A stretch of 64,000 nucleotides of DNA from Basidiobolus meristosporus CBS 931.73 (taxonomy: Eukaryota; Fungi; Basidiobolomycota): NCBI GenBank assembly GCA_002104905.1, contig MCFE01000008.1:1-64000 (forward strand). Reading direction: 5' to 3'. The notes under the pieces were generated by a model. That model was not told the origin of the DNA and searched no databases. It worked only from the letters and a program-made list of their open reading frames with translations. The position numbers and the translations under genes are program-made. Shown here one piece after another: positions 2,374-24,439 of this stretch (its first letter is position 1; every line of letters starts with the position of its first letter).

Positions 2374-2862
2374 TCAATTAAGCAGAAACTTGATTCCCAT
2401 TCGTTCGGTTGATAATACCCCGTCAAAAGGGCGACTGATTCGCACGGCCTCTTCCGTTGTACGTTGCTTGCACTTTGAATGTTTGCACGTTGAATATGGG
2501 TTCGAGGCAGAACTGTCAGGTAGAGTCTTTACTGAGTATGACGAGGCAGATGAATCAGAATCGCTTTCGTGGTCTGGCGACCTTCTTTTGCGTGATACAG
2601 CAGACGGATGATCTAACGCTAAATGGCGGGAGATTTGGTCACTACGCGTGAAGCCTTTGTTACACCCAGGCACAGGGCAGATATGTGGATATTCACCAGA
2701 GTGGATACGGAAATGGCGTTTGTAATTGTCTCGTCGTCCAAAGGTTTTTTTACACACGGGGCATTGGAAGTGGTTCAATTTTTGGTTCCTGCTAGACTTC
2801 ACCTCGCGTGAAAAATAGCTGGGGTCCATTGAACTGGATGTGTACACAAATCGAAAATTCAT
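2374..2862 (-). CDS. Two-finger C2H2 zinc-finger transcription factor, paralog ZF1
   Basis: CPVC..FGRRDNYKRHFRIH-SGEYPH-CPVPGC..FTRSDQISRHLALDH; Ser-rich middle; C-terminus RMGIKFLLN; intronless. Confidence 0.9.
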   Translation of the reverse strand: MNFRFVYTSSSMDPSYFSREVKSSRNQKLNHFQCPVCKKTFGRRDNYKRHFRIHSGEYPHICPVPGCNKGFTRSDQISRHLALDHPSAVSRKRRSPDHESDSDSSASSYSVKTLPDSSASNPYSTCKHSKCKQRTTEEAVRISRPFDGVLSTERMGIKFLLN

Positions 2863-3279
2863 TCTAAAGAGGAGGAATGTGGCAGTTGTCGGTCGACCAT
2901 AGCTCTTATATTCGCACCAACTGATCTAAATTTGTCTGTGCATGGAACATTCCTTCCAAGCAGATTACTCCACCAAATCCTTGGATTCAGTCACTTTGGT
3001 CGTTGACAATATAAATTGTATCAGCCAATTATTAGAAATCGTACCCAATCTAGAATACTGGCCAGACTCGAAATACGGAAGTTTATTAGGATTAATTAAG
3101 GGCGTCAACACAATTATAGTTGAACTCGATACGCATTTGATACAGCGGGATTTCGGAAGGTCTCCGTTCGGCCAAGTCCGAAATCCTCGGTCTGTGAACG
3201 ATCAACGCCAAATGCGGATGTTTGTTAGAGACGCTTTGTTCAGTGGTTATTTTGGATCTAGACAGTCTGGCCAATCTGT

Positions 3280-3579
3280 TCAATTTAATAGGAAGTTAAC
3301 ATTCATAATGTGACTTTCCTTGTCTGGTTCTTTAGTATCGCTCGTTGCACAGCTGCACTCATCACGCTCCTTAGCATCGACGATGCTGGTGGAATGGTAC
3401 ATCACTTCATGGCGCGAGAGCTGATCGCTGCGAGTGAACGATCTATTGCAGTCCATATGGGGGCAGGTGTACAAGTTCTCACCGGTGTGCCGTCGCATGT
3501 GACGTTTGAAGTTGTCTCTTCTTCCAAAAGATTTCCCACACACTAGACATTGGGTCCTTTTGTTCTGCACGGTCATCAT
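3280..3579 (-). CDS. Two-finger C2H2 zinc-finger transcription factor, paralog ZF2
   Basis: CLVC..FGRRDNFKRHMRRH-TGEN-CPHMDC..FTRSDQLSRHEVMYH; ends IMNVNFLLN. The open frame extends to 3627, but a TATAAAT inside that extension (~3605-3611, minus strand) favours the ATG at 3579. Confidence 0.85.
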   Translation of the reverse strand: MMTVQNKRTQCLVCGKSFGRRDNFKRHMRRHTGENLYTCPHMDCNRSFTRSDQLSRHEVMYHSTSIVDAKERDECSCATSDTKEPDKESHIMNVNFLLN

Positions 3580-3799
3580 GAATGCGGACAAGTGAACAGC
3601 CTCATTTATATGGTCCAATTCCCCCATTGTCTAGTATCGGACACTTAGTTTCATAGCGACAGAGGCCTGATCCATTGTGACTGTGCCAAATGTCTATTGT
3701 ATTGTTTACAGCGATTGGAGTCTAGATCTCACATCACATCTTCACTATTGATATAGATGCACAGAAAATCATTCAATACCATCGAGAATTGTACATGAG

Positions 3800-4290
3800 A
3801 GTCTATTGTGTTGTTGCAGCCACATGAACCTATATTAGAGGTTAGGTTCCATTCTTTGTGGCAAGTGTGTGGGGAACTATTTGTATGTCGAATGACCGCA
3901 CTACAAACCCATAGTGGTCGGCGTCTACTGGAAAGGCTTTTTGATCTTCTCAATGTTGATGTATAAATTTTTAGATGCAAGGGCAGTATCGTAACATAAT
4001 GTCCCTGAATTTTGCTCATGTTATTGGGTAGAAATGCTGATTTGGTATTCATTAAAAGAATGCGTGATTTCACTTGCTGGTTTATAGGGTAAGAATGAAG
4101 TATCTGTACTTTCGTAGATCTTACCAAGGCATTCTTTATTTTCCAGGTCGCAGTTCCATGCAGCTCCCTCTCCAAGTGTTGTTATGGGTAATAACGGCAA
4201 AGTGTCAGGATATTCCACAGCCCTAGCGTCACATTGTATGATTTTCAAGTTGGCCGTAATGCTAAAATACATATGAACCACAAATGTTGT
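3800..4290 (-). pseudogene. Possible heavily decayed Ty3/gypsy RT-RNase H relic
   Basis: Across frameshifts and stops, fragments read FAVIT/PITTLGEGAAWNCDLENKECLGKIYE (like the RT C-terminal FAKIAAPLTDLLKK..WT.EC..AF.KLKE) and KPF/VDADHYGF/AVI (like RNase H KPF..TDAS.YG.GAVL). By-eye similarity only. Confidence 0.3.
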
Positions 4291-4349
4291 TGCAATAGCA
4301 TCTCACAATCTGCGAAATAGGTTGGACCCCGAGACCAGTTCTAAACCTT

Positions 4350-4485
4350 TGTTGTAAATAATTGTTTTGCCAATACCATGTGTACGTATAAATATCATTT
4401 CTATATTCAGTAAATCATTAAGTGAAAACCATACAATGTACTTGCTTTCTCACCCACTTCTAATATTTCCTAGACTTTTGCAATA
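4350..4485 (+). mobile_element. Degenerate LTR fragment of the copia family at 6369-11054, opposite orientation
   Basis: gtataaatatcatttctatattcagtaaatcattaagtgaaaacc...tttcctagacttttgcaata aligns with the 3' third of the element-sense LTR (gtataaatactacttttacattcaatcaatcattaagtgaaaacc...ctccaagactcttacaaca). Confidence 0.75.
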
Positions 4486-4976
4486 TATTCTGCTTGTTAC
4501 TCACATGTTTGCATGTAGGGCTCAAACCAAGTATTTATACACAAATGAGATTATACAAAACAAAAGATGCAAACATGTAGAGAAAAGTCCTGAGAAGCAA
4601 TGCTCCAAGCTTAGGGCTCTTTGTATGAGCTTGAATTTTCTGATAAATTACTGTACTTCATTGACATAATGAATTGGTCAATACCATAAAAACCAAAATA
4701 CAATTAGCAGCTTATGACTCAGCAATAAGCTGACAAAAATATTTGATTAATATCTTATATAATGCTAAACTAAGTATTTACAACTTTACATATATACCTA
4801 GCATTCAAACTCATGTAGTAACACTTGGAGTATATAAATATTGTTGGTTTTGTAACTACACTAGAATACTCCATTTACTTAGTCATTTGGGCAGTAGCCT
4901 CTGAGTCTTGAAATAATTATCTGTAGTTTTGGTTGCTGTTAATGTGGAGAAGGTTCTCAAATTTTCATGATGTAGG

Positions 4977-5321
4977 TGTTATATATTTTTGTAACTACAC
5001 CCAAGTATTCACCTAACTTAGTCTCTTTGATTGTTGCCTACAGGTATTAGAGAACTCAGCATATACTTTCTGTCAGGACTTAGAATATACTCTCCAGTGT
5101 AGCAGGTACCTAAAACATGAAGTTTCTCAAAGTTGTTCAAACAGCCCAATCTTTGTATATATGCTCTTGGGACCTTGCTGAGCATATGCCAAGTGAGTCT
5201 GCTTTGCCAAGGATGTACAGGAACTTAAAAACTACTGTTATATTCAATATATCATCAAGTGAAAGCACATGATCTATTTGTTCTTCAAATCACTTCCAAT
5301 ATCTCTAAAACTCTTACAACA
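4977..5321 (+). mobile_element. Diverged full-length solo LTR, same copia family, opposite orientation
   Basis: About 345 bp collinear with the element-sense LTR from TGTT.. through gtattcacctaacttagtc, catgaagtttctcaaagttgttcaaacagccc, gctcttgggacc to cacttccaatatctctaaaactcttacaaca. No TSD recognisable. A further short fragment lies at ~4841-4905. Confidence 0.8.
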
Positions 5322-5825
5322 ACATGAGCCTGATATTTTGCCTAGTCAGTCAAATGACCAAAGGCTTTGTACACATGTACTTACAACCTTTCTAAGTATG
5401 CTATACATGTTAAACCTATCAAGACTATGTAAATATAATAGTACCACCATTGCATTCAGTCAGTAGTTCCTCATGAAAAAGAAATAATTTCAGGCCAGCA
5501 GAATTCCAACATAACATTAGCTGGATCTCAAGTTTACCAAAGCCTACAACTCTCAGTATCTCAGGTACTAGCCATCTGGTAGATAAGTCAATGTATTTCT
5601 TAAAAGGTGACTGGGCTAACCAGCATTGATACCAGACTTGGTAATCACCCACTCACCACTTACCTCAAAGATTACAGCCCAAATTTTGAAGAAGAAACAC
5701 AAGCTGAACGCTAGCAAAATACCACTAGGATACCAGCACAATACTGGCAAATCATCAGAATGAATTCCAATTTAATATTTCTCACAGGGATTAAGTTAAG
5801 CCCCCTGATGCACCAATTCTTGCAG

Positions 5826-6325: not shown

Positions 6326-6368
6326 CACCATATGCTTGCTTTCCAGATCCCTTGATGTATCTCCAGGA

Positions 6369-6718
6369 TGTTGTAAGAGTCTTGGAGATATTGGAAGTGA
6401 TTTGGAGAACAAGTAGATTATGTGGTTTTCACTTAATGATTGATTGAATGTAAAAGTAGTATTTATACTTTTACCTGGTCTTGGCATTACAAACACATAG
6501 GATAGGTTAAGAAAGGTCCCAAGAACATGTGTGCAAGGTCTGGGGCTGTTTGGACAACTTTGAGAATTTTCATGTTCTGGGTACCTGGTATTTTGGTGAA
6601 AATATTCTAAGTAAATCCCAACAAGGAATTTTGGTCAGTATTCTCTAGGATTTGAAGGTGATGATCTAAGTGACTAAGTTAGGTGAATATTTAGGTGGAA
6701 TTCCGAATTTTTACAACA
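6369..6718 (-). repeat. 3' LTR of copia element (350 bp)
   Basis: Direct repeat of 10706-11054; 8-bp terminal inverted repeat; preceded on the minus strand by purine tract GAGTGGGAG (PPT, + coordinates 6719-6727). Confidence 0.97.
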
Positions 6719-6729
6719 CTCCCACTCAG

Positions 6730-9700
6730 CTAAATGTTCATACTGGCTAGTCCTAATTTTGACCTAAAATATTCAAACTTGTCTCTAGCTAATGGTTTGG
6801 TAAATATGTCTGCAATCATTTCATCTGTAGGACAGTAAACTAATCTAACTAAGTCATTCTCTATAGCTTCTTGTATGAAATGATGTCTAATATCTATGTG
6901 CTTGGTTCTAGGATGAAAAGTTGGATTTCTACCTAATTGTATACATCCTTGATTATCTTGAAATAAAGTAATAGGCGTTTTTTGACATAGGCCTAAATCT
7001 GTAAAGAGCTTTCTTAACCACATTGCTTCTTTTGTAGCTTCACAGGCTGCCATATACTCTGCCTCTGTGGTGGAAAGTGCTATGGTTGGTTGCTTTCTTG
7101 AATTCCATGAAATTGCTCCTTTACAGTAAAGAACGGTGTATCCTGTGGTGGATCTTCTGTCTTCCAAATTTTGTCCCCAGTCAGCATCAGAGTATCCCAC
7201 AAGATCCTGTTCTGAATCATTATAAGTGTATCTTAAGCAGATATCAGCAGTTCCTTTTAGGTATCTAAAAATCTGCTTAACTGCTGCAGTATGATCAGAT
7301 CCATAGTTCTGATTATGTTGGCTGACAACTCCCACTGAATATGAGATATCTGGACATGTTCCAAGCATGATATAAATCAGACTGCCAACCATAGATTGAT
7401 AAGGAAAGTCAGGGCTTTCAGATGGCACCAAGCTCTCTTGATTTGGTTGAGTTTTGACCAAGTCAAGGTTTGTCTCCATTGGGGTAGCTGCCGGTTTACA
7501 GTCTTCCATTTTGTACTTCTTTAGTATATCTTGAATATACTTGGATTGACTTAGGGTGATAGTCTGGGTACTTCTGTCTATGGAGAACTTAATCCCTAAG
7601 TAGTAACTAAGTTCTCCTAGATCAGACATCTTGAACTCCTTAGATAGGCTGGATTTAGTCTCTTCCAATGTTTCTAGGTTATTGGCGGCTATAATAAGAT
7701 CATCCACATATAGAGCTAATAGAACTGAATTTGCTCTATCTGGCTTATAGTATATACTATAGTCAGCATTACTCCTTTTGAAACTCAAAGATTCCAAATA
7801 AGAATCTATCTTGCAATTCCAGGCTCTTGGTGATTGTTTGAGACCATATAGTGACTTTTTAAGCTTGCAGACCAAAAGGGGGTTATTTTGGTCAACAAAC
7901 CCATCAGGCTGGTCCATATACACGTCCTCATCAAGTTCTCCATTCAAAAATGCAGTTTTTACATCCATTTGATGAATAAAAAACTTATATTTGGGTGCAA
8001 TAGCCAGTATTAATCTGATGGAATTAAACTTGGCTACCAGTGCAAAGGTCTCAGTATAGTCAAGTCCTTTTGTTTGAGAGTATCCTTTGGCTACAAGTCT
8101 TGCTTTGTATCTTTCAACTGTACCATCAGCCTTGTATTTTGTCTTGAAGACCCATCTGCATCCAATTGATTTTTGGTTGATTGGTAATTTGACTAAGTCC
8201 CAAGTTTGATTTTCCATCAGGGCCTGATATTCCTCAGTCATTGCAGATCTCCAAAACTTTGTCTGAGGGCTATTTAGGGCCTCTTTTACAGTCTGGGGTT
8301 CATCAATATGGACTGAATAGGCATAGGCTAAGTTTGTACCCTCATTGATATAGTAATTTGGGCTATTTCTTGTCCAATTGGATCTCCGGGCATTTGATAC
8401 TGGAATGATAACTTCTGGGATATTCCTGGGCACTGATTCTGGCTGAACCACGGTTGTAGAGTCCTCTGGAGTGAAAAAAATTTCATTGTTTTGCTCTGAT
8501 TCAATCCTGACAATTGGTGGACTTGAGATCAAATTTTCGTCATCATCTGATGTCATTTTTTGTGAAAATTTTGAATTTTCATCAAACAACACATCCCTGG
8601 ACTTGATAAGCTTCTTTGCTTTGGTATTGTAGAGTCTGTATGCCTTACTCTCATTGCAGTAGCCCAAAAATATGCATTTTACATTTTTTGGCTCAAATTT
8701 TGACTGATTTCCGGCCAGTTTTTTGGCATATGCTGTGCACCCAAATATTCTTAGATGTTCTGTACTTGGTGTGTATCCATACCATGCTTCAAATGGAGTA
8801 GAATCACGAAGTATTCTGTTATAACTCCTATTTTTAAGGTATACAGCAGTGGCAACTGATTCTGCCCAAAAATCATAGGATAATTTTTGATCATGGATCA
8901 TAGATCTTGCCATATCAATTATTGATCTGTTAGCTTGTTCTGCTACTCCATTTTGCTGTGGGGAGTATGGTACAGTAGTCTCTTGCTTTATCCCATGAAT
9001 TTTGCAGAAGTGGATGAAGAGTTTTGAGGTATATTCTCCACCATTGTCAGAGCGTATTTTCTTGATTTTTTCACCAGTTTCTCTCTCCACCATGGCTTTA
9101 AACTCCCTGAACTTAGACAGAGCTTCTTCCTTTCTCTCCATGAAGTAGACCCATGTGTATCTTGTATAATCATCAATAAAAGTGATTAAATACTTCATCC
9201 CGCCAAAGGATAAATTTTGCATAGGTCCACACAGATCTGAGTGAATTAGATCTAATTTTTTCTTAGTTTTGATTAACCCAGAGCTCTTGAACGGTTGTCT
9301 GGCTTGTTTCCCATATATGCAGGCTTCACAGTGCTCCAAATTAGCTGGGGGATCAATTTTCACTCCAGAAATTAGCTGATCTTTGATCATTTTACGCAAA
9401 AAATCAAAATTGATGTGTCCAAATCTCCTGTGCCAAAGCATTGGTGTTTCTTCATTTAAGTTACTTATATTGGCTTCCAGATATGATGGAATATAAGTCA
9501 ACTTGTATAGATTATGATCTCTGATACCCAAAGCAATATGGGCACCATTTTGATCAGTGATCCTGCATCCAGAATTGTCAAAACTGAAACTGAGTCCTTC
9601 TGCTGTGGCCTTGCTTACAGAGAGTAGGTTCTTGGCTATTTCTGGTACATAGAGTACTTCTTTAAAGGTCAGTGTATGGCTTCCTTCACTGCTTCTAAGG

Positions 9701-10701
9701 TTTACTTGGATAGTTCCTTCTCCCACTGCATCAAGTGTTCTATTGTCACCCATGAAAACCTTCTTAATTGGAATTTCTTAATATTGGGTAAAAAGTTCTT
9801 TTTGGTGTGTAAAGTGTTGAGAAGCTCCAGAGTCAATATACCACGTCTGAGAATTCTTGTTTGTGGTCATATTTAGTGTAGATATGACTAGTCTATCTTC
9901 AGTTGTTGCAGCATTTCCATATTCAGGCTTCTTTTGCTGATTATCTTTCTTTTTGAGACACCGGTCTGATGTGTGTCCTTTCCTTTTGCAGTAGTTACAA
10001 AACAGGTTGCTGTTGCCTTTGTAGGGTCTTGGGTACCTCCTTTGTTGGTTATCATTGCTTATTAAAGCATTTTCTTCTTCCTTCTTATTGGCGCTTGATT
10101 TTCTTAATTCTTCATCCAGGAGCCTTCCATATACATAATTTAAGGTCAAATCTTCAGTTCTGGACTCTAGGGCTGATACAAGGCCCTGAAACTTGTCTGT
10201 CAGGCTATTCAGGATAGTAACTATCACATCCTCATCAGTAGTTGGTATGCCCACAGATTCCATCTCATCTACCAGCAGGGTAATTCTGTTAATTAGATTT
10301 TTCATTTCTTCTCCTGGCAGCATCTTTGTAGTAAAGAATTTTTGTCTCAGATACATTTTCTTGGCAGCTGAACATGACTGGTAGGTGTCTTCCAATGCTT
10401 TCCAGGCATTCTTTGCCGTTTTTGCTCTTGAGCATTGAATTAGCAATTTGTCCTTAACATTAAGGCAAATGCAGTTAAAGGCACTTTGTTCTTTCTTCTG
10501 GTACTTTAAGGCTTCCTCTCCCACATTTTTAGGAGGGCATACTTCTCCCATGACAATATCCCAAAGGCCTCTTTCTTGTAGCAGCATCTTCATCTTCACC
10601 TTCCACGCTTGGTAGTTAGATCCATCCAACTTTTCAGCAGAGGGAAAAATTCCAGTAATAGCAGTAGTAGACATTGCAGGGAGTGACAGCTTGGGGCTCA
10701 T
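6730..10701 (-). pseudogene. Copia gag-pol polyprotein interrupted by one in-frame TAA (9778-9780)
   Basis: Gag (KLDGSNYQAW, CNYCKRKGHTSDRC knuckle), PR (WYIDSGASQH), IN (HRRFGH..CEAC, HSDLCGP, DDYTR, RSDNGGEY), RT (MDVKTAFLNG, LYVDD), RH (GYSDADW, KHIDIRHH). ORFs 9778..10833 and 6730..9753 share one frame: ELFTQY*EIPIKKVFMGDN. Probable start is the ATG at 10701 inside the PBS. Confidence 0.92.
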
Positions 10702-10705
10702 AGCC
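10690..10705 (-). other. Primer-binding site, half-tRNAiMet type
   Basis: GGCTATGAGCCCC directly after the 5' LTR resembles the Ty5 (GGTTATGAGCCCT) and Drosophila copia (GGTTATGGGCCCA) PBSs rather than the usual TGGTATCAGAGC. Confidence 0.8.
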
Positions 10706-11054
10706 TGTTGTAAGAGTCTTGGAGATATTGGAAGTGATTTGGAGAACAAGTAGATTATGTGGTTTTCACTTAATGATTGATTGAATGTAAAAGTAGTATT
10801 TATACTTTTACCTGGTCTTGGCATTACAAACACATAGGATAGGTTAAGAAAGGTCCCAAGAACATGTGTGCAAGGTCTGGGGCTGTTTGGACAACTTTGA
10901 GAATTTTCATGTTCTGGGTACCTGGTATTTTGGTGAAAATATTCTAAGTAAATCCCAACAAGGAATTTGGTCAGTATTCTCTAGGATTTGAAGGTGATGA
11001 TCTAAGTGACTAAGTTAGGTGAATATTTAGGTGGAATTCCGAATTTTTACAACA
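10706..11054 (-). repeat. 5' LTR of copia element (349 bp)
   Basis: Direct repeat of 6369-6718; contains GTATAAATA on the element-sense strand. Confidence 0.97.
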
Positions 11055-11084
11055 CAGGAGACATAAAATGATTTGCCAACTTTA

Positions 11085-11225: not shown

Positions 11226-11247
11226 CAAGATTTAAACATCAATAACT

Positions 11248-11594
11248 TGTTGTAAGAGTCTTGCAGATATTGGAAATGATTTGGGAGGATAAGTAGATTA
11301 TGTGGCTTTCACTTAATGACATATTGAATGCAAAAGTTGTATTTATACTTTCACATAATCTTGGCAAAACAAATGCATAGAATATGTTTAGGAATGTCCC
11401 AAGAGCATGTGTGCAAAGTTTGGGGCTGTCTGAACAACTTTGAGAATTTTCATGTTCTAGGTACCTGCTGTTTTGGTGAAAATATTCTAAGTTAATCCCA
11501 ACAAGGAATTTGGTCAGTATACTCTAAGACTTGTAAGTAATAATCTAAGCAACTAAGTTAGGTGAGTATTTAGGTGGAATTATAAATTTTACAA
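11248..11594 (-). mobile_element. Solo LTR, same family, moderately diverged
   Basis: Starts TGTTGTAAGAGTCTTG and is collinear over ~347 bp with 10706-11054 (roughly 85% identity by eye); 3' end altered (ttttacaag); no clean TSD. Confidence 0.9.
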
Positions 11595-14109: not shown

Positions 14110-14900
14110 TGGAGTCACTAGAACAGTTACTGTCATATGATCCATGACTTACTGATCTGTGGTCTAATCATCAATATCTGATTGATTTGAATCAGTTCAC
14201 TCACAACCTACATTCACTGTTGTCGCTATGCAGTATAACTCAGCCTCGCTGGTTAGATCTGACACCTACCGAATCAGTGGCTACTCGAGGTTGCAATCAG
14301 GGACATGAATCCGCCAAACCTCAATGAGCCTAGGCGAAAACGGATTGGCCTGTCTCGAGACGTCGGCTTGGCGCATTGAGCATTCCTTCGCATCAAGCAA
14401 ATAGTCACCCTCACCATTCATATCCTCATCCTCATCCTCGCCCTTACCCCTACCCTTACCCTCGCCCTCGCCCCAGCCTCATCCTTACCCTGATCATTGC
14501 TTTCACTCACCCCCTACCCTCGCCCTCGCCCCTCCCGACCTGTCCCTTCTTTCCATCCTTTTCAAGCCAACTTGCTAATCTCCCGATCTTCACTCCCACC
14601 ATTGGTGAGCCCTGACTAAGCTCTTTCCCTTCGTCCGAAAGGATTGGCCGCCCTGAGCAGATCTTCCCTCGCTCGACTCAGCACCGTGACCATACTCGGT
14701 AAGTGTCACTCATCAACCACACACACTCATCACCCCCACAACTTGTATCCGCCCGTACCCACTCAGATCTTTGTTGTTGCGGCCGCTCTTATCAGCAAGT
14801 ACACCCGCACCAGCTCTCCCACAACAATGATCTACATTTTAGTACCGCTACTGAGTGTGAATCTTACCATATTAAGCCATATTCAGTGGTGGATACACCC
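14110..14900 (+). repeat. Long inverted repeat, left arm (~790 bp)
   Basis: Reverse complement of 21194-21966 with only scattered substitutions outside a variable CC(T/C)(CAT/CGC/TAC) hexamer tract; the same small ORFs appear on both strands of the ORF track (14644+/21450-, 14376+/21700-). Confidence 0.95.
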
Positions 14901-16265
14901 TGAGCCGTTCTGCCAGTTGATCTTTGATCATTTTGTAGATCCCAATATTAACGCCAACTCATAAAGTCACCCCCCAATCCATTCTCTACCAATACCAATA
15001 TCAAGACACCAGAAACCCTACAGCTGATTCAGCCGCATCGGAAGTATCGTATCCGTTAGAGTCCTTTTATCGAAGTGAAGAACGTGAACTTTATGAAATT
15101 AAGTATTGCTACGAAGGCGGATGATTGAAATATACAAGCAAGTTTCAATCAGATTTAATCTAATACTAACCTCACGTTCATCAATGCTGCTCATCCTTAA
15201 TCGAGAACCCTCGAATTGCTGTTTGAATTTAGGAAAGTGGGGTTGATGGTGGTGGATACCGATAGATTGCTCATCCAATGAGATACATCCCGTATAATTC
15301 CCGATTGATTTGTGCCTCCAATTCTTTCCGAGTCTTCATGTAATAAGATTGTCACACAGAGGGTGAGGTAAGACAATAGCAGAATTATTCGATCAATCAT
15401 AAGCCTAAGTCCTCGCACTGATCGAATGTTCCAAATGCGAGTCAAGTGACCAATATAGTCTAGATTTGAGTTAATGTTGTGGGTGGCCTTGGTCCCATCC
15501 AGGGGTAATCAGTGAAGCCAGATATACCTGGATTTTACACTGTGAAATCGTGGAAAATCTAGAACTCGATTTACCTTCAAGCCATCCATCGCTAAAGCGG
15601 CTTCGGATAAATCCGCTAAAGAAAGCGTCTTGTGTGAAAGAGTCTTGAGCATCGTTCTTTTCTCACCTAGACTGTCCACACCGATCACGGAATCGGGCCT
15701 AGCTTACAAATCTAGCAATGGCGACATCGTTTGTTGAGCCGAATCCGTAACTAAATATAGGAGATGCACTCCAATTTCTCATCCAGAGCGCTCAATGTTG
15801 ACCATAGCCTAATCAGAGGGGCTTTGCCAAGAACGTGTACCAATCAATTCTGCAGATGGTCTAAGTAATCCCGAGTCGCCATCTCAGCTCTATCGACAGT
15901 TTTAGATTTCACATCGCTCCTCTCTGTTGACTCTTTAACCTAGTCCCCATAAAGTAACTTCTTGATAGGTACACCCAAAAATAACTTATCATCGAGTAGT
16001 GAGAACCAATGGTAGGCACCATTGCAATTATGGCCAATGGGAGCAGGATGACTCACAATAGAAAATACAGGGAATAATTCTTGTTGAATGGATGTTTAAT
16101 GTGAATAAATACATATGTACATTACAAAATATTGGATCTGAAGATGCGTCCAACCAAATGATTCGGCTGACATAGCAGATAAATCACCAAGACGCCCAGG
16201 TGTGCTATTGTACAATTTACTGGTTTCTATGAGGGTTCCTCGATGAAATAGCTACCAAGCTTGCT

Positions 16266-16706
16266 CTAATTGAGCAAGAAATTGAGCTCCATTCGAGACT
16301 CCAGACGGGGTGAGATGAGCACCGTGTCGTTGACCAGGTTCTTGATGCACATGGGCGATTGGGAGAAGGCTTGCTTTCTGTAATCTGGAATGGTGTAGTC
16401 AGGGACCAGATGGTCGGCCACTGTCTGAAGTGAGTCCTCAGAAGTGGCTGATCCACAATCACTCTCGGGTGATCCAGTTCTTGGCGCAAGCTCAGCGTGT
16501 TTGGAGTTCAGGTGTCGTAGGAGCTGATCGCTACGAGTAAATCCTTTGCCACAGTTGGTATGTGGGCAAGGGTGAGGATATTCACCAGTGTGTGTGCGGA
16601 AGTGACGCATGTAGTTATCTTTACGATTGAAGGACTTCTGGCACACTGAGCAGGTGATTTGAATTGGCTTTCTGCGGTAGGTGGTACGAGTAGCTGTGGC
16701 TTTCAT
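16266..16706 (-). CDS. Two-finger C2H2 zinc-finger transcription factor, paralog ZF3
   Basis: CSVC..FNRKDNYMRHFRTH-TGEYPH-CPHTNC..FTRSDQLLRHLNSKH; GSPESD..SEDSLQTV; PMCIKNLVN and terminal RMELNFLLN; TATAAAT ~60 bp upstream. Confidence 0.92.
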   Translation of the reverse strand: MKATATRTTYRRKPIQITCSVCQKSFNRKDNYMRHFRTHTGEYPHPCPHTNCGKGFTRSDQLLRHLNSKHAELAPRTGSPESDCGSATSEDSLQTVADHLVPDYTIPDYRKQAFSQSPMCIKNLVNDTVLISPRLESRMELNFLLN

Positions 16707-19700
16707 GGTGAAGGAATATTAAGAACTACTAAGATTGAATGCCAGTAGAGGGATGATGCCTCCCCTATTTATATTTCTCAGGAGGGCTCTGACACAGGCC
16801 AAGCATTTTTTGATTTGTCCATTCGAATGTTCCACCGCGATCAACTGAATTATGCAAGATACCCCAATGATCGAGTACAGAAAATCCGTACTTCATTGTT
16901 CCCAATTTGTGACTAACCTGCAACCTCACCATCCCTGTTCCGGCCCTCATTCCATGTTGGCTGTGAACTTGATTATTCGGAGAATCGTTTTACTTTGGGC
17001 CATATGACCAAGTCACTTGATCCCCAACACAAAACCAACCTCAGTAACGGCTGTGTAACAAGCTAAAATTCGATTGTTGATATCTATGCTATTGCACCAA
17101 GAACCCATTTGGAGGATTAGGAGGATTATCATCCAAGCTGGAACAAATCAAACGTTTCACCGATTTACCAGCGAAATTGTCACTCCACTGGGATCTCTGG
17201 TGCACAGAGAAGAAGGGTGGATAATGATCTCCGAAGGAATACTCGCTCCTTCCATTTACATCAAGACAAGTTCAACCTCATCAGAAGCTACAGATTAACA
17301 TCGACTGAACCTTTCGTAGGAATGATCCCGGATCGGAACGATCACGATATATCTAGGATGTAGATGAAATCTCACAATATCACTTATCTTTCGATCAGCT
17401 TCCTTCATCCACGTGTAGGGACATTGGCCCAAATCCACTCCTGATTATCCATACTTGTCCGGTACATCGGTGCGGAAGAGGGCGATGGGATGGAATGTGG
17501 CTTAACTGCTGGCATTAGTACAAAATTATCTAGCATCAGGATGGTGTAAGCGAGATTACGCTCGAAGGCGAATCGTTCCATAGAATGAAACCCATCTGCA
17601 GTGCAACGTCAAAACCGGGAATGGAGAAAATGTGGCTTATTGTATATGGGAGTGATTCGCATGCCAAATATAGGCAGAATCCTCACCACAAGCTGGCATA
17701 TTCCATCTATAATCGATATGGACCTTTTTGGCTATCGAAAGCCATCCGTTTCATCGCCTTAATTATCTGGCTACTTGGTATTCGTGAAATGGAGTTGGGA
17801 GCCTTTTTAGATGGTAGGAGGGAAGACGGTCGATACATGAGATCGAATCAATCTAGATGGATTTCGCCATCAATATACCACTCCTTTCAGTTGCGCTTAC
17901 TTTTTTAGCCGCCATATACGCAGACGAAGTTTCTATCAACGCTGGAGGAGGCGAAAGTAAGAATGTCCATTCGTGAATCGCTACGATCAGCCGTCAACCA
18001 ATTAGAAGGAGACCGTTGCTCTCGACTTTTCGGATAAATTCCAAATGGCAGTTACGAATCTGTCCAAAATAGTCCCTACTCCCATTATTGTACAAAGCAA
18101 GAGTGGCGAGGCTATTGGGCCGTTTGTACAGAGTCAATCCGAAGTGCTGAATAGGTATATATATCAATTGAAGGTGCTATATCAAGGTTAGTCCTAAGAC
18201 AACTTATTATTGGGGATTCACAAATTTATTTATTTGGATATACGATAGGGAGAATGGCCGAATATAAATCATCTAAATTTGGATGATAGATTACTTTCGG
18301 TGCACGTATTCTAGAATGAGAGGTTTCAATTTCATTCTAATATATATATAAACTCCATCTTTGACGGAGGTAGAATAACTTCATTGATCCTCGGATGGGA
18401 TGTCATTTTGCTAGCTAAGTTTGCTTGCAGAATGGATAGACGACATTAGCATGGAATGAGTTCGTGGGAAATCTGTTCAGAGAGGTTCTCCTCGGTACAT
18501 TGCACTTGCTTACGAGTTGTGTCACTTCGTGGATAGGTACCAACGGGAAGCGAGTGCCACCCATCATGGTTCCAGGGAATATCATAGCATCAGATTTGGA
18601 TTAGTGGGGAAGACTTACCAGTACATCCGTTCTTAGAAACAATTTCCTAGGCAATTTATGTATTGGATATCCCAATAAAGTGGTGGAGCGTTCCACACCG
18701 ATCAGAATGTTCATAATTTATCCAATAGAAGATAAGCTTCTCCATTAAGAATCTCCTCAGTGTATTTATTAACAATCAATCACCCATAGCATTCAATACC
18801 GAATCGGCACCATGCCTGGACGCAACAAATGAACTCCGCACAGCTGACCCCTAATCCAAGTGACACAGAGCTTGGCGACAGGAACATGATTGAATAAGAG
18901 GGTCATCCTTCTTAAGTACTAATATTTATACAACTAGATGGGGTATGTATGAATTCGTAAGCATGGTTTGAAATTCTGGATGCCGGTCCTGTTCCTGCTC
19001 ATTTGAGGTGCAGCACTTGACCATATTGCTGTTATGAGTTTGCGTACATCAGACTCGGTTGTCGTAACGTGTTTGAAAACCTGTAATGTCACTGCAATGG
19101 ATCTACTCCCCAAGCGGTGGAGTGCTTTCGTTGTCACCAAGCCAGCGGGATTATATCCATATATGCAGCCAAGGTCAATATAGGAAACTATACGAGCAGG
19201 GGCATTTCAAATAGACTTCCTCGAATAATCCCATGGTTGGAGAGGCTTAGTACTTGACAGTTCCAATGAGAGTCTTGGTGAATTGTGTGCTCTTTTCAAG
19301 CCAGTCAAATGTCTGTAGAGATACGGCCTAGGCCTGTAAGTATGAGACATTAAAATTAATCCGATGATTGGTTTGTGTGTCCTCACGTGCTCCAGCCAAT
19401 CTCCTGTGAACTCAATAATGAAGTGTTACAAGAGAAAATGTAGTTCTGGTAAGGAAACGTTTGAAACTAGGTTTCCCAGCTCATTCACCTTTGATAACAT
19501 ACCACTTCCTGACCAAAGTTCTGGGCCCTGTTACACCTCATCAGACTTGGGCAGAAACAACCACAGTTACTCCGCTCTTAGACTTGAATTGATATAAATG
19601 CAGCATATGGATACATATGTAGTGAGTGAATTGTGGTGTTTAAGGAGTAGAGCCGAGAGCTTGGTATTCAACATTTTCCTGGTAACGCAGTTTTTGCTCG

Positions 19701-20073
19701 ACTGAAACAAAGCAGCAACTAACACAGGTAGGTGTACAAGTGGCTTTGAATAGGCTGGGATCAAGGCGATATAGTTCCTCCCAAGTGATATGTATCAATG
19801 ATTTGGCGTTCGCCCGTAAATAGTAATATTTCTAATCAACATCTGTTGAGATTATTAGTCAGCAGCGCTTAGCGGTTAGAAACAGCGACCACCTCCACAT
19901 ATGGCGAACTAAGAATCATTTAGCACCATGATGTGGCTTTTGCAAGAGCGCGGGTTCTAGTGACATTGCTTCGTGTTTATTTTGAAAGCAGAGTGGTGTG
20001 CATATTTACAAGTAATTGATGTTCAATAAATAGAAAATTGTCCATTGGTAAAGCTCTAATGGCAGCAAGTACC

Positions 20074-20484
20074 CTAATTCAGAAGAAAGTCCAGACTCAT
20101 GCGGGTGCTTTTTCCTCCTGCAGAAGAAAAGTGCTGCTTCGAGATGCTACCCATTCTGAGTATCCTGGATGTAAGGTCTGGGAAACATCCGTACGCACGA
20201 ACGGTTTGAAGAGAATCCTCTGAGCAAGAGGAGGTGAAACTATCCGGAGATCCGTTTCTCATGAGAGTTTCGTTATGCTTGGAGGCGATGTGTCTAACGA
20301 GTTGATCACTTCGTGTGAATCCTTTTTTACAGTTGGGATGAGGACATTGATGAGGTAGCTCTCCGGTATGAGAGCGGAAATGTCTCAAGAAATTGTCTTT
20401 GCGATTGAAAGTCTTTGTGCAGAGTGAGCAATTTATTGTGATGGACTTTCTGCGGGAGGCACTGTTGGGTGTGGCGATTTTCAT
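20074..20484 (-). CDS. Two-finger C2H2 zinc-finger transcription factor, paralog ZF4
   Basis: CSLC..FNRKDNFLRHFRSH-TGELPH-CPHPNC..FTRSDQLVRHIASKH; GSPDS..SEDSLQTV; ends RMSLDFLLN; TATAAAT ~50 bp upstream. Confidence 0.92.
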   Translation of the reverse strand: MKIATPNSASRRKSITINCSLCTKTFNRKDNFLRHFRSHTGELPHQCPHPNCKKGFTRSDQLVRHIASKHNETLMRNGSPDSFTSSCSEDSLQTVRAYGCFPDLTSRILRMGSISKQHFSSAGGKSTRMSLDFLLN

Positions 20485-21193
20485 TGTGCTGATGATTTGG
20501 ATTGTGAGTTAATGGAAGTGCGAGTTTTAGGAATATTTATACAATCCGCGAGTAACTCGAGGGATCCCGAGTAAATATTTCTAGAATGCATTATATTGGA
20601 AGGTTCATGTCTCATCTTACCATCCTTAGGAATTAACTTCAGAAGTTTATGCATGAGTGAGACATAGACTATTCAGTAAACCACTACCATTCATTAATTG
20701 GACGCCATTAAAGACATCTTTTAATACTCTGCTCATATTCTTGGCCCGCATGAAGCTTCCTCAGATTTGTAGATCCAATCCGTGATGATTTTGAAACTTC
20801 AAGCCTTAGCGGCACTATTCACCAGAGGGAGCATCAATGGCCAAGTACAATATGCTGGTTGATTGGTAAAGATAGCACCATTCATCCAAACCCGCGATCG
20901 CTATTTTCTACCACTCCATCTCTGTTGCCCCTGTCCGTATCTGAATCTCAAACCGAGCCTGATATACGCCCAACTTGCTGTAACTGGTTGTTGTTGTTGA
21001 GCTAACTCAGTTCGTGAAGTACTGAAACGGGGATACCAAGGAGATTATAATTGAAAAAGATGTATTGAATTATAGCTTCGCCACCAAAAATATGATAACC
21101 CAACATCCCTGCCCTTCCTAACAAGCTTGTTCACGGAAGCCAAGAGAACAGGACCTGTACGAAAAATCTACTACCAGAAAAGATTCTACCTCC

Positions 21194-21966
21194 GGGTGTA
21201 TCCACCACTGAATATGGCTTAATATGGTAAGATTCACACTCAGTAGCGGTACTAAAATGTAGATCATTGTTGTGGGAGAGCTGGTGCGGGTGTACTTGCT
21301 GATAAGAGCGGCCGCAACAACAAAGATCTGAGTGGGTACGGGCGGATACAAGTTGTGGGGGTGATGAGTGTGTGTGGTTGATGAGTGACACTTACCGAGT
21401 ATGGTCACGGTGCTGAGTCGAGCGAGGGAAGATCTGCTCAGGGCGGCCAATCCTTTCGGACGAAGGGAAAGAGCTTAGTCAGGGCTCACCAATGGTGGGA
21501 GTGAAGATCGGGAGATTAGCAAGTTGGCTTGAAAAGGATGGAAAGAAGGGACGAGTCGGGTCGGGAGGGGCGAGGGCGAGGGTAGGGGGTGAGTGAAAGC
21601 AATGATCAGGGTAAGGGCAGGGGTAAGGGCGAGGATGAGGGTGAGGATGAGAATATGAATGGTGAGGGTGACTATTTGCTTGATGCGAAGGAATGCTCAA
21701 TGCGCCAAGCCGACGTCTCGAGACAGGCCAATCCGTTTTGGCCTAGGCTCATTGAGGTTTGGCGGATTCATGTCCCTGATTGCAACCTCGAGTAGCCACT
21801 GATTCGGTGGGTGTCAGATCTAACCAGCGAGGCTGAGTTATACTGCATAGCGACAACAGTGAATGTAGGTTGTGAGTGAACTGATTCAAATCAATCAGAT
21901 ATTGATGATTAGACCACAGATCAGTAAGTCATGGATCATATGACAGTAACTGTTCAAGGGACTCCA
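21194..21966 (-). repeat. Long inverted repeat, right arm (~770 bp)
   Basis: Reverse complement of 14110-14900; shorter hexamer tract and a small duplication (ccgac) relative to the left arm. Confidence 0.95.
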
Positions 21967-23899
21967 TATCTGTAAGGCTGTTACTGGCTTTGATGCGACC
22001 ATATGTTATGGCGGTCATCCCACGCTCTCTTCATCTCCAACACGCTCTCATACACATGGAGACATATGAATCATTGTTGGAGTGTCTATTCTGAAGTGAT
22101 TAAAGGCCTAGTGCCTTGACTGTTTATGTACTTCGGCTAGACGCCATTATATAAGATGGACTGAATGATTCTTAGCGCTATTGGCTTCCATCTGAGTCAA
22201 TGTTGTTGGAAGATCAGCTCAACAAGCATAGGAAATCGAACACCCTACTAATCCTAGCAAGCACTGTGGTACACTATATATGAAGTACTGATAAACTAAC
22301 TGGCAAATATTTGTAAATATCAAGGTACAAGCTATTATATCGTATTTACCAGGCGTCCTATGATAAACCACTTTGTCGTTGATGACTAGGGCACCTATCA
22401 TATGGTGCCTATTTATATCCAGTTTCTGACAAATATCTCGTGCTCAACACTCGATGCATAGTTGCAACATTCGCGATGAGCGTGCTGTTTACTCTAGGCA
22501 CTAAATCCTGAAAACCAATATCCCCAAATTTTGCGAGAATTTGCGGACTAGCTTTCATATTTTATTGAGTAACTTTAACCATTATCGGTGTCGAGGCCAA
22601 GCATAAGGAAATGTTGTATTTCACTAAATTACTAATCAATTTGCTCCCAAGCTTGCTTATACCCCCGTCATCATTTGTTACTTTCCCATGTCAGGTCCAT
22701 TTATGGAATTCTACCTAATGAAGAAATACCGATATTGGTAAGAACTGTCAAACTCCATATATATTTTGAGAAATGTACAAAATTGGAACCATGTAAAAAC
22801 GGAAATATACTATAAAAGTGAATCACATGCTCATGGTATATATATCTCGACAGCAGGAGGTTTCCATAATCAAATCGATTTCAAATATTATCAAACGATA
22901 AGACCCCCCACTCCCTCACTGAATGTCCTCTTAAAATATAAAGTCTTGATTAGGCAAAATTACAAAGAAAACAGAAGGTAGGACTGATCGTCTATTTATT
23001 TAACGGGATGCTACACTCAACACTCAATGGTGGTAGCTATATACACAAATGTGATTCACCCAATGGCACTATGTACACGGAGGAGGTTCACTCACTTGCC
23101 ATTGTCAAGATGATTTGCAGCCGAGTATCCAATTTGTCTTGGCCTCGAATGGTGAAATAGCACATGTTGATGATAAAGGTGAATACGTGATCTGAAAAAA
23201 AAAGAATTAAACAAGTATACTAGTAATGCATTCGATCGGTCAGTACATAACTTGGTGATTCCGTTATCTCTCACCCAAATACGGGTAACCGGCCTGGCAA
23301 AAGTAATTCTGGTTAATCTATGAAAGAGCAAGTCAGTATCCTCCCTTCGATCGGTAAGTCTCATTCCTACACAACTCCCAGGGTTCTGGCTACTATACCC
23401 GTCAGCCATATAGAACTAAGCACTCACCCTCACCGAACGACTCATGCAAATGATCACTGACGCTGAAAGCTAGCTAGTATTCGATCATATGTACGTTAGA
23501 ATGAAATTGCTGTGCATACATATACATACTTATACAGGTTAAGGTTAAGGTTTTATCAATTTATGGCTGAGGGTAGCAAAATACCGCACTTTCTCCTAGA
23601 ATGTGTCATCACCTTCAGTTTTATGAATGTGCCACAACAATTAAATCCCATATATTCTATTGGGAGGATACGTTGGATTTATTTTACTATGAGGTTCAGA
23701 GTTTCATAATATACACGTAGGGTACAGTCAGATTTATTCAGATAGTATGTACAGGTAGGAGCTCTGTCTGTAAAGCCAGTATGATTTCAATTCCGGACGC
23801 CAGCATTGAACGGTATCCTGATTGCATACTCGGTGATTATTTGAGCAGATGTTCCTGGCGGGAGACTAGGGTATGAACAGCAAGGTCCGAGTTCTTTGT

Positions 23900-24439
23900 T
23901 CAGTTTAACAGAAAGTTCAGGTCCATCTGAGATGACCCTTCGGTATCTGAGGAGTGCACCGTCGCTGAAGAATGCTGAATTGTATGCTGGTGGAAGGGGT
24001 CGAAATCAAAACTATTTTGAACAGGCTCCGGAAGCGTGACTAGTGAGTTGCTGGGCTTCTCTGACTTCGAGCTGCTGTCGCGAGTGGCTTCCTTTTTTGG
24101 CTGTGCTTCGTCTTTGGGATAGAAGAAACTATTCTCGTAATAAAATAAGGTCCCGCTTAATGGTTCGTCTCCTTGAGACTGACTCTGAGCCATGTTGGTG
24201 TGAATAGTGACGTGTCGGGCGAGCTGGTCACTTCGAGCAAAGCTCTTTTGGCAGTTTGGGTGTGTGCAATAGAAGGGCCGCTCACCAGTGTGTGTTCTAT
24301 AATGGCGTTTTAAATTATCCAGGCGGCCAAAGGTCTTATCGCAGATAGTGCATGAATATTGGCGATTTGAACGGGGACTTGTTTGTCGCGAAGGAGGTTT
24401 GTCGAGTTCCGGGCTGTGTACGCGGCCAACCATAGGCAT
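23900..24439 (-). CDS. Two-finger C2H2 zinc-finger transcription factor, paralog ZF5
   Basis: CTIC..FGRLDNLKRHYRTH-TGERPF-CTHPNC..FARSDQLARHVTIH; ends QMDLNFLLN; intronless. Confidence 0.92.
   Translation of the reverse strand: MPMVGRVHSPELDKPPSRQTSPRSNRQYSCTICDKTFGRLDNLKRHYRTHTGERPFYCTHPNCQKSFARSDQLARHVTIHTNMAQSQSQGDEPLSGTLFYYENSFFYPKDEAQPKKEATRDSSSKSEKPSNSLVTLPEPVQNSFDFDPFHQHTIQHSSATVHSSDTEGSSQMDLNFLLN

What the first reader, a model, noticed from the sequence alone, without database searches (positions are those of the whole stretch)
2374..24439. Five clustered C2H2 paralogs all ending in a Matalpha2-like co-repressor motif
Seen: five same-strand, intronless, two-finger genes over 22 kb. 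Outside the fingers they are largely unalignable, yet all end at the exact C-terminus with MGIKFLLN, MNVNFLLN, MELNFLLN, MSLDFLLN or MDLNFLLN, and ZF3 has a second internal copy (MCIKNLVN). Established: the terminal peptide of yeast Matalpha2 (IPIKDLLN) recruits the Tup1 WD40 domain, and the eh1 motif (FSIxxIL) recruits Groucho/TLE. Inference: an expanded family of minimal DNA-binding plus Tup1-recruiting repressors, possibly an undescribed regulatory module in this lineage.
Basis: partly seen in the sequence, partly recalled or inferred. Interest (0 to 1): 0.78.

Follow-up and report, generated by a model that had tools for sequence, protein, structure and literature searches.

The report
Zinc-finger family with corepressor-docking tail
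Five tiny DNA-binding proteins clustered in the fungus Basidiobolus all end in the same eight-residue peptide, which matches the piece of yeast Mat-alpha2 that docks the Tup1 co-repressor, so they are probably dedicated gene silencers of an unstudied, lineage-specific family.

Summary
Five minus-strand, single-ORF, two-finger C2H2 genes of 115-179 aa lie at 2374-24439. Each ends in M-x-[LIV]-x-F-L-L-N followed by a stop (5 observed against 0.01 expected).

The genome is Basidiobolus meristosporus. Fifteen distinct family genes in B. meristosporus and B. ranarum all keep the tail. They do so although synonymous sites are saturated, the linkers diverge and the 3' flanks cannot be aligned, so the peptide is under purifying selection. 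The ZF3 subfamily also keeps an internal copy, M-x-I-x-N-L-[IV]-x.

A profile of the region after the fingers, searched against 1.84 billion proteins, found only Basidiobolus. AlphaFold gives two confident fingers and a disordered remainder, as expected for a short linear motif.

New context: a four-finger C2H2 family across Mucoromycota, Glomeromycotina, Mortierella and Kickxellales starts at residue 1 with MDI[RK]xLLN. Conserved positions 1, 3, 6, 7 and 8 coincide with Mat-alpha2 I4, I6, L9, L10 and N11. I4, L9 and L10 are the residues whose mutation abolishes Tup1 WD40 binding.

Most likely these are minimal repressors that recruit Tup1(-Cyc8). Verdict: a new variant of a known kind, of moderate to high interest.

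The parts
2374..2862 (-). ZF1 gene, 162 aa, two C2H2 fingers (2608-2763), fast-evolving member
   Evidence: not annotated with this sequence
2377..2400 (-). ZF1 terminal octapeptide MGIKFLLN, followed by stop 2374-2376
3280..3627 (-). ZF2 gene, 115 aa, fingers 3394-3549, shortest linker and longest branch
   Evidence: public model is only a 71-aa fragment (P0014)
3283..3306 (-). ZF2 terminal octapeptide MNVNFLLN
16266..16706 (-). ZF3 gene, 146 aa, fingers 16497-16652; identical to an NCBI model; B. ranarum ortholog P0005 is 80% identical
16329..16352 (-). ZF3 internal motif MCIKNLVN, conserved in 7 members of the ZF3 subfamily
16269..16292 (-). ZF3 terminal octapeptide MELNFLLN
20074..20484 (-). 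ZF4 gene, 136 aa, fingers 20275-20430; ortholog P0006
20077..20100 (-). ZF4 terminal octapeptide MSLDFLLN
23900..24439 (-). ZF5 gene, 179 aa, fingers 24200-24352; ortholog P0007 in conserved synteny (PHP, CP2, SMG1 neighbours)
23903..23926 (-). ZF5 terminal octapeptide MDLNFLLN, the end of a ~25-residue block conserved in the ZF5 subfamily

Best explanation
These genes encode a Basidiobolus-specific, tandemly expanded family of minimal sequence-specific transcriptional repressors. Two classical C2H2 fingers have almost invariant base-contacting residues (finger 1 R-x-D-N-x-x-R, finger 2 R-S-D-Q-L-x-R). The paralogs should therefore read the same short purine-rich site (inference from the canonical recognition code). 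The rest of the protein is intrinsically disordered. It carries a short linear motif at the extreme C-terminus, M-x-[LIV]-x-[FY]-L-L-N, and in one subfamily a second internal copy. This motif is the same kind of peptide as the N-terminal I-P-I-K-D-L-L-N of yeast Mat-alpha2. Most likely it folds into a short amphipathic helix that plugs the central pocket of the WD40 propeller of the Tup1(-Cyc8) co-repressor, bringing histone deacetylases and masking activators at target promoters. Shown here: the genes, their conservation, selection on the peptide, disorder, lineage restriction, and the occurrence of the same octapeptide at the N-terminus of another fungal C2H2 family. Inferred: the partner (Tup1), the repressive outcome and the DNA site.
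For: The motif is present in 15 of 15 distinct family genes from two species, and every two-finger ORF in the fetched loci has it. Positions 1, 3, 5, 6, 7 and 8 are invariant or conservative, while positions 2 and 4 vary freely. Synonymous sites between orthologs and paralogs are saturated (pS about 0.8), and Leu, Phe and Asn codons differ between copies. The DNA after the stop cannot be aligned. Linker pN is 0.24-0.68, against 0.08-0.29 in the tail, where the amino-acid differences fall almost only at positions 2 and 4. The very divergent ZF1 and ZF2 (branch lengths 1.6 and 3.1) still keep the fingers and the tail. The AF2 model has confident fingers, pLDDT below 50 in the linker and a slight rise at the tail. 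The same octapeptide (M-D-I-[RK]-x-L-L-N) starts 47 proteins at residue 1, and 50 within the first 20 residues, among the 120 listed homologs of a four-finger fungal family. It is absent from all named animal ZNFs in that list. Literature: alpha2 residues I4, L9 and L10 are required for Tup1 WD40 binding, and the peptide is read as an eh1 variant lacking the initial Phe. Tup-type pockets (Y,L pair) are predicted to disfavour that Phe (PMC4943189; PMC4901127). Met or Ile at position 1 fits this. The alpha2 sequence was verified in PMC10163088 Table 2.
Against: No binding, repression or expression data exist. No RNA run was listed. No Tup1 sequence could be obtained, so no complex prediction was run. 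Yeast repression domains are degenerate hydrophobic patterns that often bind Sin3, Cyc8 and Tup1 interchangeably (PMC10163088), so the partner may be another hub. Position 5 is aromatic in the C-terminal class but Asn or Asp in alpha2 and in the N-terminal class, so the classes might not be equivalent. The predicted DNA site GAGGAG shows no enrichment near the cluster.
Confidence: 0.55

Rival explanations
1. The octapeptide is a co-repressor interaction motif, but its main partner is not the Tup1 propeller. It could be a Sin3 PAH domain or the Cyc8/Ssn6 TPR array, or it could bind several hubs redundantly.
For: Systematic mapping in yeast found minimal repression domains that are disordered, are defined by hydrophobic spacing, and are bound by more than one of Sin3, Cyc8 and Tup1 (PMC10163088). 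One member's internal motif (MNIQNLVH) superficially resembles the start of the Mad1 SID (recalled from memory).
Against: The published SID consensus patterns listed in PMC10163088 mostly need an Ala-Ala pair or a longer helix, and neither is present. The conserved positions (1, 3, 6, 7, plus Asn 8) match the alpha2 residues mapped genetically to Tup1 binding (PMC4943189).
Confidence: 0.2
2. The terminal peptide controls the protein itself rather than transcription. It could be a degron, a nuclear export signal or a chaperone/quality-control signal that keeps these small factors short-lived or shuttling.
For: In alpha2 the degradation elements coincide with co-repressor binding sites, and Tup1/Ssn6 protect it from degradation (PMC4591686). 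The near-obligatory terminal position (13 of 15 end exactly at Asn) would suit a C-degron.
Against: The same octapeptide works internally (ZF3 subfamily) and at the extreme N-terminus (four-finger family), and two members carry 1-2 extra residues after it. A free carboxylate is therefore not required. The spacing does not fit the classical CRM1 NES classes (my pattern check, established consensus).
Confidence: 0.12
3. It is an EAR-like motif (LxLxL / DLNxxP) as in plant C2H2 repressors, binding a LisH/CTLH-type groove of a TOPLESS-like or TBL1/Sif2-like protein.
For: Some tails contain D-L-N or L-x-F-x-L, and the architecture (small C2H2 plus C-terminal repression peptide) mirrors SUPERMAN/ZAT proteins. 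EAR binds the TOPLESS N-terminal domain (PMC4646777 abstract; PMC4943189 discussion).
Against: Position 5 is Asn in the internal and N-terminal classes, which breaks LxLxL. The invariant positions are 1, 3, 6, 7 and 8 rather than 3, 5 and 7. The fingers lack the plant QALGGH signature (sequence). Fungal TOPLESS orthologs are not known (my knowledge).
Confidence: 0.05
4. The shared ending is an artefact of recent duplication or gene conversion with no function.
For: The genes are clustered, and a 98.75% identical second copy of the ZF3-ZF4 segment exists.
Against: Synonymous sites are saturated between the distinct members. Codons for the same residues differ, and the flanks cannot be aligned. 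Orthologs in B. ranarum and an old paralogous block (L004, 72-78% DNA identity in coding parts only) keep the peptide.
Confidence: 0.02

Closest known systems
Yeast Mat-alpha2 N-terminal Tup1-interaction peptide (MNKIPIKDLLN), read as a modified eh1 motif
   Same: Same spacing and chemistry: hydrophobic residues at positions 1, 3, 6 and 7 and Asn at 8. The alpha2 residues needed for Tup1 binding (I4, L9, L10) map to the invariant Met1, Leu6 and Leu7. Both sit at a protein terminus in a non-domain region of a DNA-binding repressor (PMC4943189, PMC4901127, PMC10163088).
   Different: The motif is C-terminal (or internal) instead of N-terminal. Met replaces Ile at position 1, and an aromatic residue replaces Asp at position 5. 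It is attached to C2H2 fingers rather than a homeodomain. Binding has not been tested.
Metazoan eh1 (FxIxxIL) and C-terminal WRPW Groucho/TLE-interaction motifs
   Same: All are short peptides in disordered regions that dock into the WD40 propeller of a Groucho/Tup-type co-repressor. WRPW of Hairy/HES is likewise at the extreme C-terminus. eh1 also occurs on bilaterian C2H2 proteins (PMC4943189).
   Different: There is no initial Phe/Tyr and no WRPW. Fungi have Tup, not Groucho, and the two are argued not to be orthologs (PMC4943189).
Mig1/CreA/Scr1 two-finger C2H2 repressors that recruit Tup1-Cyc8
   Same: Two classical fingers plus co-repressor recruitment. CRE1/CreA physically interacts with Tup1-Cyc8 (PMC8710005). 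S. pombe scr1 carries a conserved [VI]xx[IL][LM] candidate motif (PMC4943189). From memory only, CreA/Cre1 N-termini carry V-D-F-x-N-L-L-N-P; this was not verified here.
   Different: These proteins are much smaller (115-179 aa). The finger recognition helices appear different (comparison with Mig1/CreA is from memory). No Mig1/CreA-named protein appears among the listed homologs. The Mig1 effector domain mapped in yeast (residues 481-504, PMC10163088 Table 2) has a different sequence.
Plant SUPERMAN/ZAT-type C2H2 proteins with a C-terminal EAR motif
   Same: Same design logic: a minimal C2H2 DNA binder plus a terminal repression peptide that recruits a Groucho/Tup1-like co-repressor.
   Different: Different finger subtype, different motif consensus, and a different docking site (TOPLESS N-terminal domain rather than WD40). 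This is convergent design, not homology.
Uncharacterised four-finger C2H2 family of Mucoromycota/Zoopagomycota starting with MDI[RK]xLLN (e.g. P0201 Rhizopus, P0124 Rhizophagus, P0178 Tieghemiomyces)
   Same: Essentially the same octapeptide at a protein terminus of a fungal C2H2 factor. One metagenomic member (P0204) has MHLNFILN, almost the Basidiobolus tail.
   Different: The motif is N-terminal, with the initiator Met as position 1. The proteins have four fingers of a different type and are widely distributed rather than lineage-specific.

Membership tests
alpha2-type (eh1-like) Tup1/Groucho WD40-interaction motif | Hydrophobic residues spaced as positions 1, 3, 6, 7 (IxIxxLL in alpha2, FxIxxIL in eh1) | tested here: met
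   All 15 tails fit M-x-[LIV]-x-[FY]-[LV]-[LM]-N; 7 internal copies fit [MV]-x-I-x-N-L-[IVT]-x
alpha2-type (eh1-like) Tup1/Groucho WD40-interaction motif | Lies in a non-domain, disordered part of a sequence-specific transcription factor | tested here: met
   Pfam finds only the C2H2 fingers. In the AF2 model, pLDDT is above 90 in the fingers, below 50 in the linker and about 64 in the last block
alpha2-type (eh1-like) Tup1/Groucho WD40-interaction motif | Motif conserved across orthologs while the surrounding sequence diverges | tested here: met
   saturated synonymous sites, divergent linkers, and amino-acid changes in the tail almost only at positions 2 and 4
alpha2-type (eh1-like) Tup1/Groucho WD40-interaction motif | Direct binding to the WD40 propeller of Tup1/Groucho | not testable with these tools
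alpha2-type (eh1-like) Tup1/Groucho WD40-interaction motif | Motif-dependent transcriptional repression | not testable with these tools
   Needs a reporter assay
canonical metazoan eh1 (FS[VI]xx[IL][LM]) | Phe or Tyr at the first position | tested here: not met
   Position 1 is Met in 15 of 15 tails. This is consistent with the Tup-type pocket predicted to exclude Phe (PMC4943189)
Mig1/CreA/Scr1 glucose-repressor orthologs | Orthology of the finger domain and protein architecture | tested here: not met
   Outside Basidiobolus the best hits are generic KLF/Sp/poly-ZNF matches over the fingers only. The closest solved structures are generic (ZNF568, WT1, EGR1, KLF4). The post-finger profile finds only Basidiobolus
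Plant EAR-motif C2H2 repressors | LxLxL or DLNxxP motif and a QALGGH finger signature | tested here: not met
   No QALGGH is present. Position 5 is Asn in the related internal and N-terminal classes, so LxLxL is not the conserved pattern
Sin3-interaction domain (Mad1/Pf1 type) | Amphipathic helix with the consensus hydrophobic-x-x-hydrophobic-x-A-A | tested here: not met
   There is no Ala-Ala pair in or after the motif, and the protein ends at Asn 8 (consensus from PMC10163088)

The most novel reading that the evidence does not exclude
The octapeptide M/I-x-[ILV]-x-x-L-L-N (an 'LLN box') is the general, portable Tup1-recruitment motif of fungi. It would be ancient enough to be shared by Mat-alpha2, a pan-zygomycete four-finger family (N-terminal) and the Basidiobolus two-finger family (C-terminal and internal). 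This would give the first sharply defined sequence consensus for Tup1 docking and allow repressors to be predicted proteome-wide in fungi.
Probability: 0.35. Interest if true: 0.75.

Novelty: new variant of a known kind. Interest (0 to 1): 0.6.

Why it matters
How DNA-binding proteins recruit Tup1-Cyc8 is still poorly defined. Only alpha2 has mapped contact residues. Copley (2016) noted that no yeast factor matches the eh1 consensus and that a motif without the Phe is too degenerate to search for.

This family, together with the N-terminal MDI[RK]xLLN family found here, supplies a much sharper consensus: Met/Ile at position 1, and Leu-Leu-Asn at positions 6-8. That consensus is under clear purifying selection in three positional contexts.

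If it binds Tup1, several things follow. Repressors could be predicted across early-diverging fungi. Eight residues could serve as a portable repression tag. The family would also be a natural example of repressor paralogs that share DNA-reading residues but differ in their regulatory linkers.

Tried and rejected
- A word-indexed search with ZF1 alone found nothing. The alignment query was needed.
- RNA evidence: none was listed by the look-up of sequencing runs for 16000-21000. Expression and the intronless reading rest on the intact ORFs and the matching NCBI models.
- Atlas search by features with the post-finger part of ZF3 gave no usable hit. The Atlas search for the four-finger family returned only generic C2H2 names.
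- The exhaustive profile search gave one extra hit, P0241. It is a repetitive 987-aa artefact that matches only the Ser-rich part, and I discarded it.
- Complex prediction with Tup1 was not run.
- The predicted binding site GAGGAG/CTCCTC is not enriched in the window or upstream of the five genes. The idea of autoregulation is unsupported.
- Classical CRM1 export-signal spacing, Sin3 SID consensus and EAR LxLxL were checked against the conserved positions and do not fit (consensus lists in PMC10163088).
However, the second genomic copy (L003, 98.75% identical) has the same internal orientation, so there is no sign of inversion.
- Literature searches for the peptide strings and for Basidiobolus C2H2 factors found no description of this family or of the N-terminal box.

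Full report
**1. What is in the sequence**

The window has five uninterrupted minus-strand ORFs:
- ZF1, 2374-2862
- ZF2, 3280-3627
- ZF3, 16266-16706
- ZF4, 20074-20484
- ZF5, 23900-24439

A six-frame scan finds exactly ten C2H2 fingers in this stretch, two per ORF. It also finds the pattern M.[ILV]..L[LV]N at only six places in the whole 64 kb: the five ORF ends and one internal site in ZF3. Pfam sees nothing but zf-C2H2. Block shuffles of the window give a mean of 0.04 occurrences of the stricter motif anywhere and 0.01 next to a stop, against five observed.

**2. Organism and annotation**

ZF3, ZF4 and ZF5 are letter-for-letter proteins of Basidiobolus meristosporus CBS 931.73 in NCBI and UniRef, named only as hypothetical or C2H2-domain proteins. 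ZF1 and ZF2 are not in the collection as such. A 71-aa fragment of ZF2 is (P0014). No RNA run was listed, so expression is untested.

**3. The family**

An alignment query recovered seven B. ranarum proteins (P0005-P0011) and nothing else with the tail. I fetched their contigs and rescanned them, which gives 15 distinct genes:
- Three in tandem on B. ranarum L001.
- Two in tandem on L007.
- One each on L002, L005 and L006.
- In B. meristosporus, an old paralogous block on L004 (CP2, PHP, a ZF5-like gene and a ZF3-like gene).
- In B. meristosporus, a 98.75% identical second copy of the ZF3-ZF4 segment on L003.

The ZF5 ortholog keeps the same neighbours as in the window: PHP-domain gene, CP2/grainyhead and SMG1.

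Every two-finger ORF in these loci ends in the motif, and every motif sits in such an ORF. Thirteen end exactly at the Asn. One has one extra residue and one has two, so a free carboxylate at the Asn is not obligatory.

A maximum-likelihood tree shows a ZF5 group (99/99), a ZF4 group (97/99), a poorly resolved ZF3 group, and long branches for ZF1 and ZF2. The two species are interleaved. The duplications therefore predate the split of the two species.

**4. Selection**

Between orthologs and paralogs the proportion of synonymous differences is about 0.8, which is saturated. Proportions of nonsynonymous differences are:

| Region | pN |
|---|---|
| Fingers, ortholog pairs | 0.02-0.08 |
| Fingers, more distant paralog pairs | up to 0.29 |
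| Linkers | 0.24-0.68 |
| Last eight codons | 0.08-0.29 |

Amino-acid differences in the tail fall almost only at motif positions 2 and 4; the other positions show only conservative swaps. The same Leu, Phe and Asn residues are written with different codons in different copies, and the DNA after the stop has no similarity. The peptide, not the DNA, is what is conserved.

Position table for the 15 tails:

| Position | Residues |
|---|---|
| 1 | M 15 |
| 3 | L 13, I 1, V 1 |
| 5 | F 13, Y 2 |
| 6 | L 14, V 1 |
| 7 | L 14, M 1 |
| 8 | N 15 |

Seven members of the ZF3 group also keep an internal copy, [MV]-x-I-x-N-L-[IVT]-[NHD].

Two further conserved islands exist. One is a basic arm (RRK) before finger 1. 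The other is a Ser/acidic island, S-x-[ED]-D-S-[LI]-Q-T-[VI], after finger 2, which resembles a CK2-type phosphorylation cluster (inference).

**5. Structure and DNA reading**

AlphaFold2 with the family alignment gives two confident fingers (pLDDT above 90). The remainder is disordered, with pLDDT about 45 rising to 64 in the last block. This is typical of a short linear motif in a disordered tail.

The base-contacting residues are invariant or nearly so across all 15 genes: R, D, N, R in finger 1 and R, S, D, Q, R in finger 2. By the canonical recognition code this predicts a GNG-GAG-like purine-rich hexamer shared by all paralogs. This is an inference. The simplest guess, GAGGAG, is not enriched near the genes.

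The closest solved structures are generic classical fingers such as ZNF568, WT1, EGR1 and KLF4.

**6. Distribution**

I built a profile of only the post-finger region from 12 sequences and searched it against 1.84 billion representative proteins. It found two Basidiobolus representatives and one spurious repeat protein. As a family, this is Basidiobolus-specific in current data.

**7. The motif is not restricted to this family**

One weak hit, a Geosiphon four-finger protein, begins MDIKSILN. I searched with it and read the termini of the hits. Of the 120 listed proteins, 50 carry M-[D]-[IL]-x-x-[LI]-L-N within the first 20 residues, and 47 carry it at residue 1.

All 50 are fungal or unnamed environmental sequences. 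The fungal sources include:
- Rhizopus, Mucor, Phycomyces, Lichtheimia, Absidia and Umbelopsis
- Mortierella
- Endogone and Jimgerdemannia
- Rhizophagus, Gigaspora, Ambispora and Paraglomus
- the kickxellalean Tieghemiomyces

None of the named animal zinc-finger proteins in the list has the motif. One metagenomic member (P0204) has MHLNFILN, nearly the Basidiobolus tail. These proteins are all uncharacterised.

The octapeptide is thus an old, portable fungal element used at N-termini, internally and at C-termini.

**8. What the motif most likely does**

The alpha2 N-terminus is MNKIPIKDLLN (PMC10163088 Table 2). Mutations at I4, L9 and L10 abolish the interaction with the WD40 repeats of Tup1 (Komachi et al. 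1994, as reported in PMC4943189 and PMC4901127). Both reviews read this peptide as an eh1 variant without the initial Phe.

Copley further showed that Tup-type propellers carry a Tyr/Leu pair that would clash with the eh1 Phe. He proposed that Tup proteins bind eh1-like motifs lacking it. The Basidiobolus and N-terminal classes have Met at that position, Ile/Leu/Val at 3, Leu-Leu at 6-7 and Asn at 8. These are exactly the alpha2 pattern, including the three genetically defined contact residues.

The terminal placement parallels WRPW of Hairy/HES. I therefore consider recruitment of Tup1(-Cyc8) by a short amphipathic helix docking on the propeller the best explanation, with probability about 0.55. 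On this reading the proteins are minimal repressors.

**9. Caveats and rivals**

Nothing here shows binding or repression. A Tup1 gene in Basidiobolus is expected, because Tup_N is found in all fungal lineages sampled in PMC4943189, but it was not verified.

- **Another co-repressor hub.** Yeast repression domains are degenerate and frequently bind Sin3, Cyc8 and Tup1 alike (PMC10163088), so a different or multiple hub is a serious rival (0.2).
- **Degron or localisation signal.** This is possible because alpha2 degradation elements coincide with its co-repressor sites (PMC4591686). The internal and N-terminal occurrences argue against a pure C-degron (0.12).
- **EAR-like reading.** This fails on the conserved positions (0.05).
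- **Gene conversion or chance.** Excluded.

**10. Comparison with the known, and novelty**

The mechanism proposed is of a known kind: a DNA-binding protein with an eh1/alpha2-type co-repressor peptide. The following are new:
- An unstudied, lineage-specific, tandemly expanded family of very small two-finger proteins built around that peptide.
- Its C-terminal and duplicated internal placement.
- The sharper consensus, with Met first and Leu-Leu-Asn last.
- The finding that the same box heads a widespread four-finger family in early-diverging fungi.

I found no paper describing either family or the box. I rate this a new variant of a known kind, with interest 0.6.

**11. Steps not taken**

No complex prediction was run, because no Tup1 sequence was obtainable within the rules. 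No reads were laid, because no run was listed.

Noticed in passing
proteins P0019, P0124, P0201, P0178, P0157 and about 45 more: A four-finger C2H2 family across Mucoromycota, Glomeromycotina, Mortierellomycotina, Endogonales and Kickxellales begins at residue 1 with MDI[RKH]xLLN. The initiator Met is motif position 1. All members are uncharacterised. This may be the commonest home of the motif.
   Followed up: partly
window 6371-11054 (LTRs about 6369-6718 and 10706-11054; a third LTR-like copy at 11248-11594): A full-length Ty1/copia-type retrotransposon lies on the minus strand between ZF2 and ZF3. It has intact gag (9778-10833) and pol (6730-9753, 1007 aa) ORFs. The element is missing at the corresponding place of the second genomic copy L003.
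   Followed up: partly
window 14110-14904 and 21190-21966: Inverted repeat arms of about 800 bp (96-98% complementary) flank ZF3 and ZF4. The 98.75% identical second copy (L003) has both arms and the same internal orientation, so there is no evidence of inversion.
   Followed up: partly
L004:7941-8486 (+) and L004:13922-14365 (-): An old paralogous block in B. meristosporus (CP2, PHP, ZF5-like, ZF3-like; 72-78% DNA identity in coding parts only). The public model of the ZF5-like gene is a 68-aa fragment, but the ORF is complete (181 aa) and ends in MDLTFLLN.
   Followed up: yes
linker of all family members, e.g. window about 16410-16470 (-) in ZF3: A second conserved island after the fingers, S-P-[ED]-S-D-C-x-S-x-x-S-[ED]-D-S-[LI]-Q-T-[VI]. 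It is Ser/acidic, like a CK2 cluster. The ZF5 subfamily has instead a conserved S-F-D-F-D-P-F block. Function is unknown.
   Followed up: no
window 128-721 (+): An ORF with a signal-peptide-like start followed by long Gly-rich GGGSW repeats. It is possibly a secreted or cell-wall glycine-rich protein.
   Followed up: no
window 25543-26992 (+), about 29400-32050, and 34769-38908 (+): The neighbours of the cluster are conserved with B. ranarum: a PHP-domain gene, a CP2/grainyhead-type factor, and the multi-exon SMG1 kinase. A TCP-1 chaperonin subunit lies at 45494-46987.
   Followed up: partly
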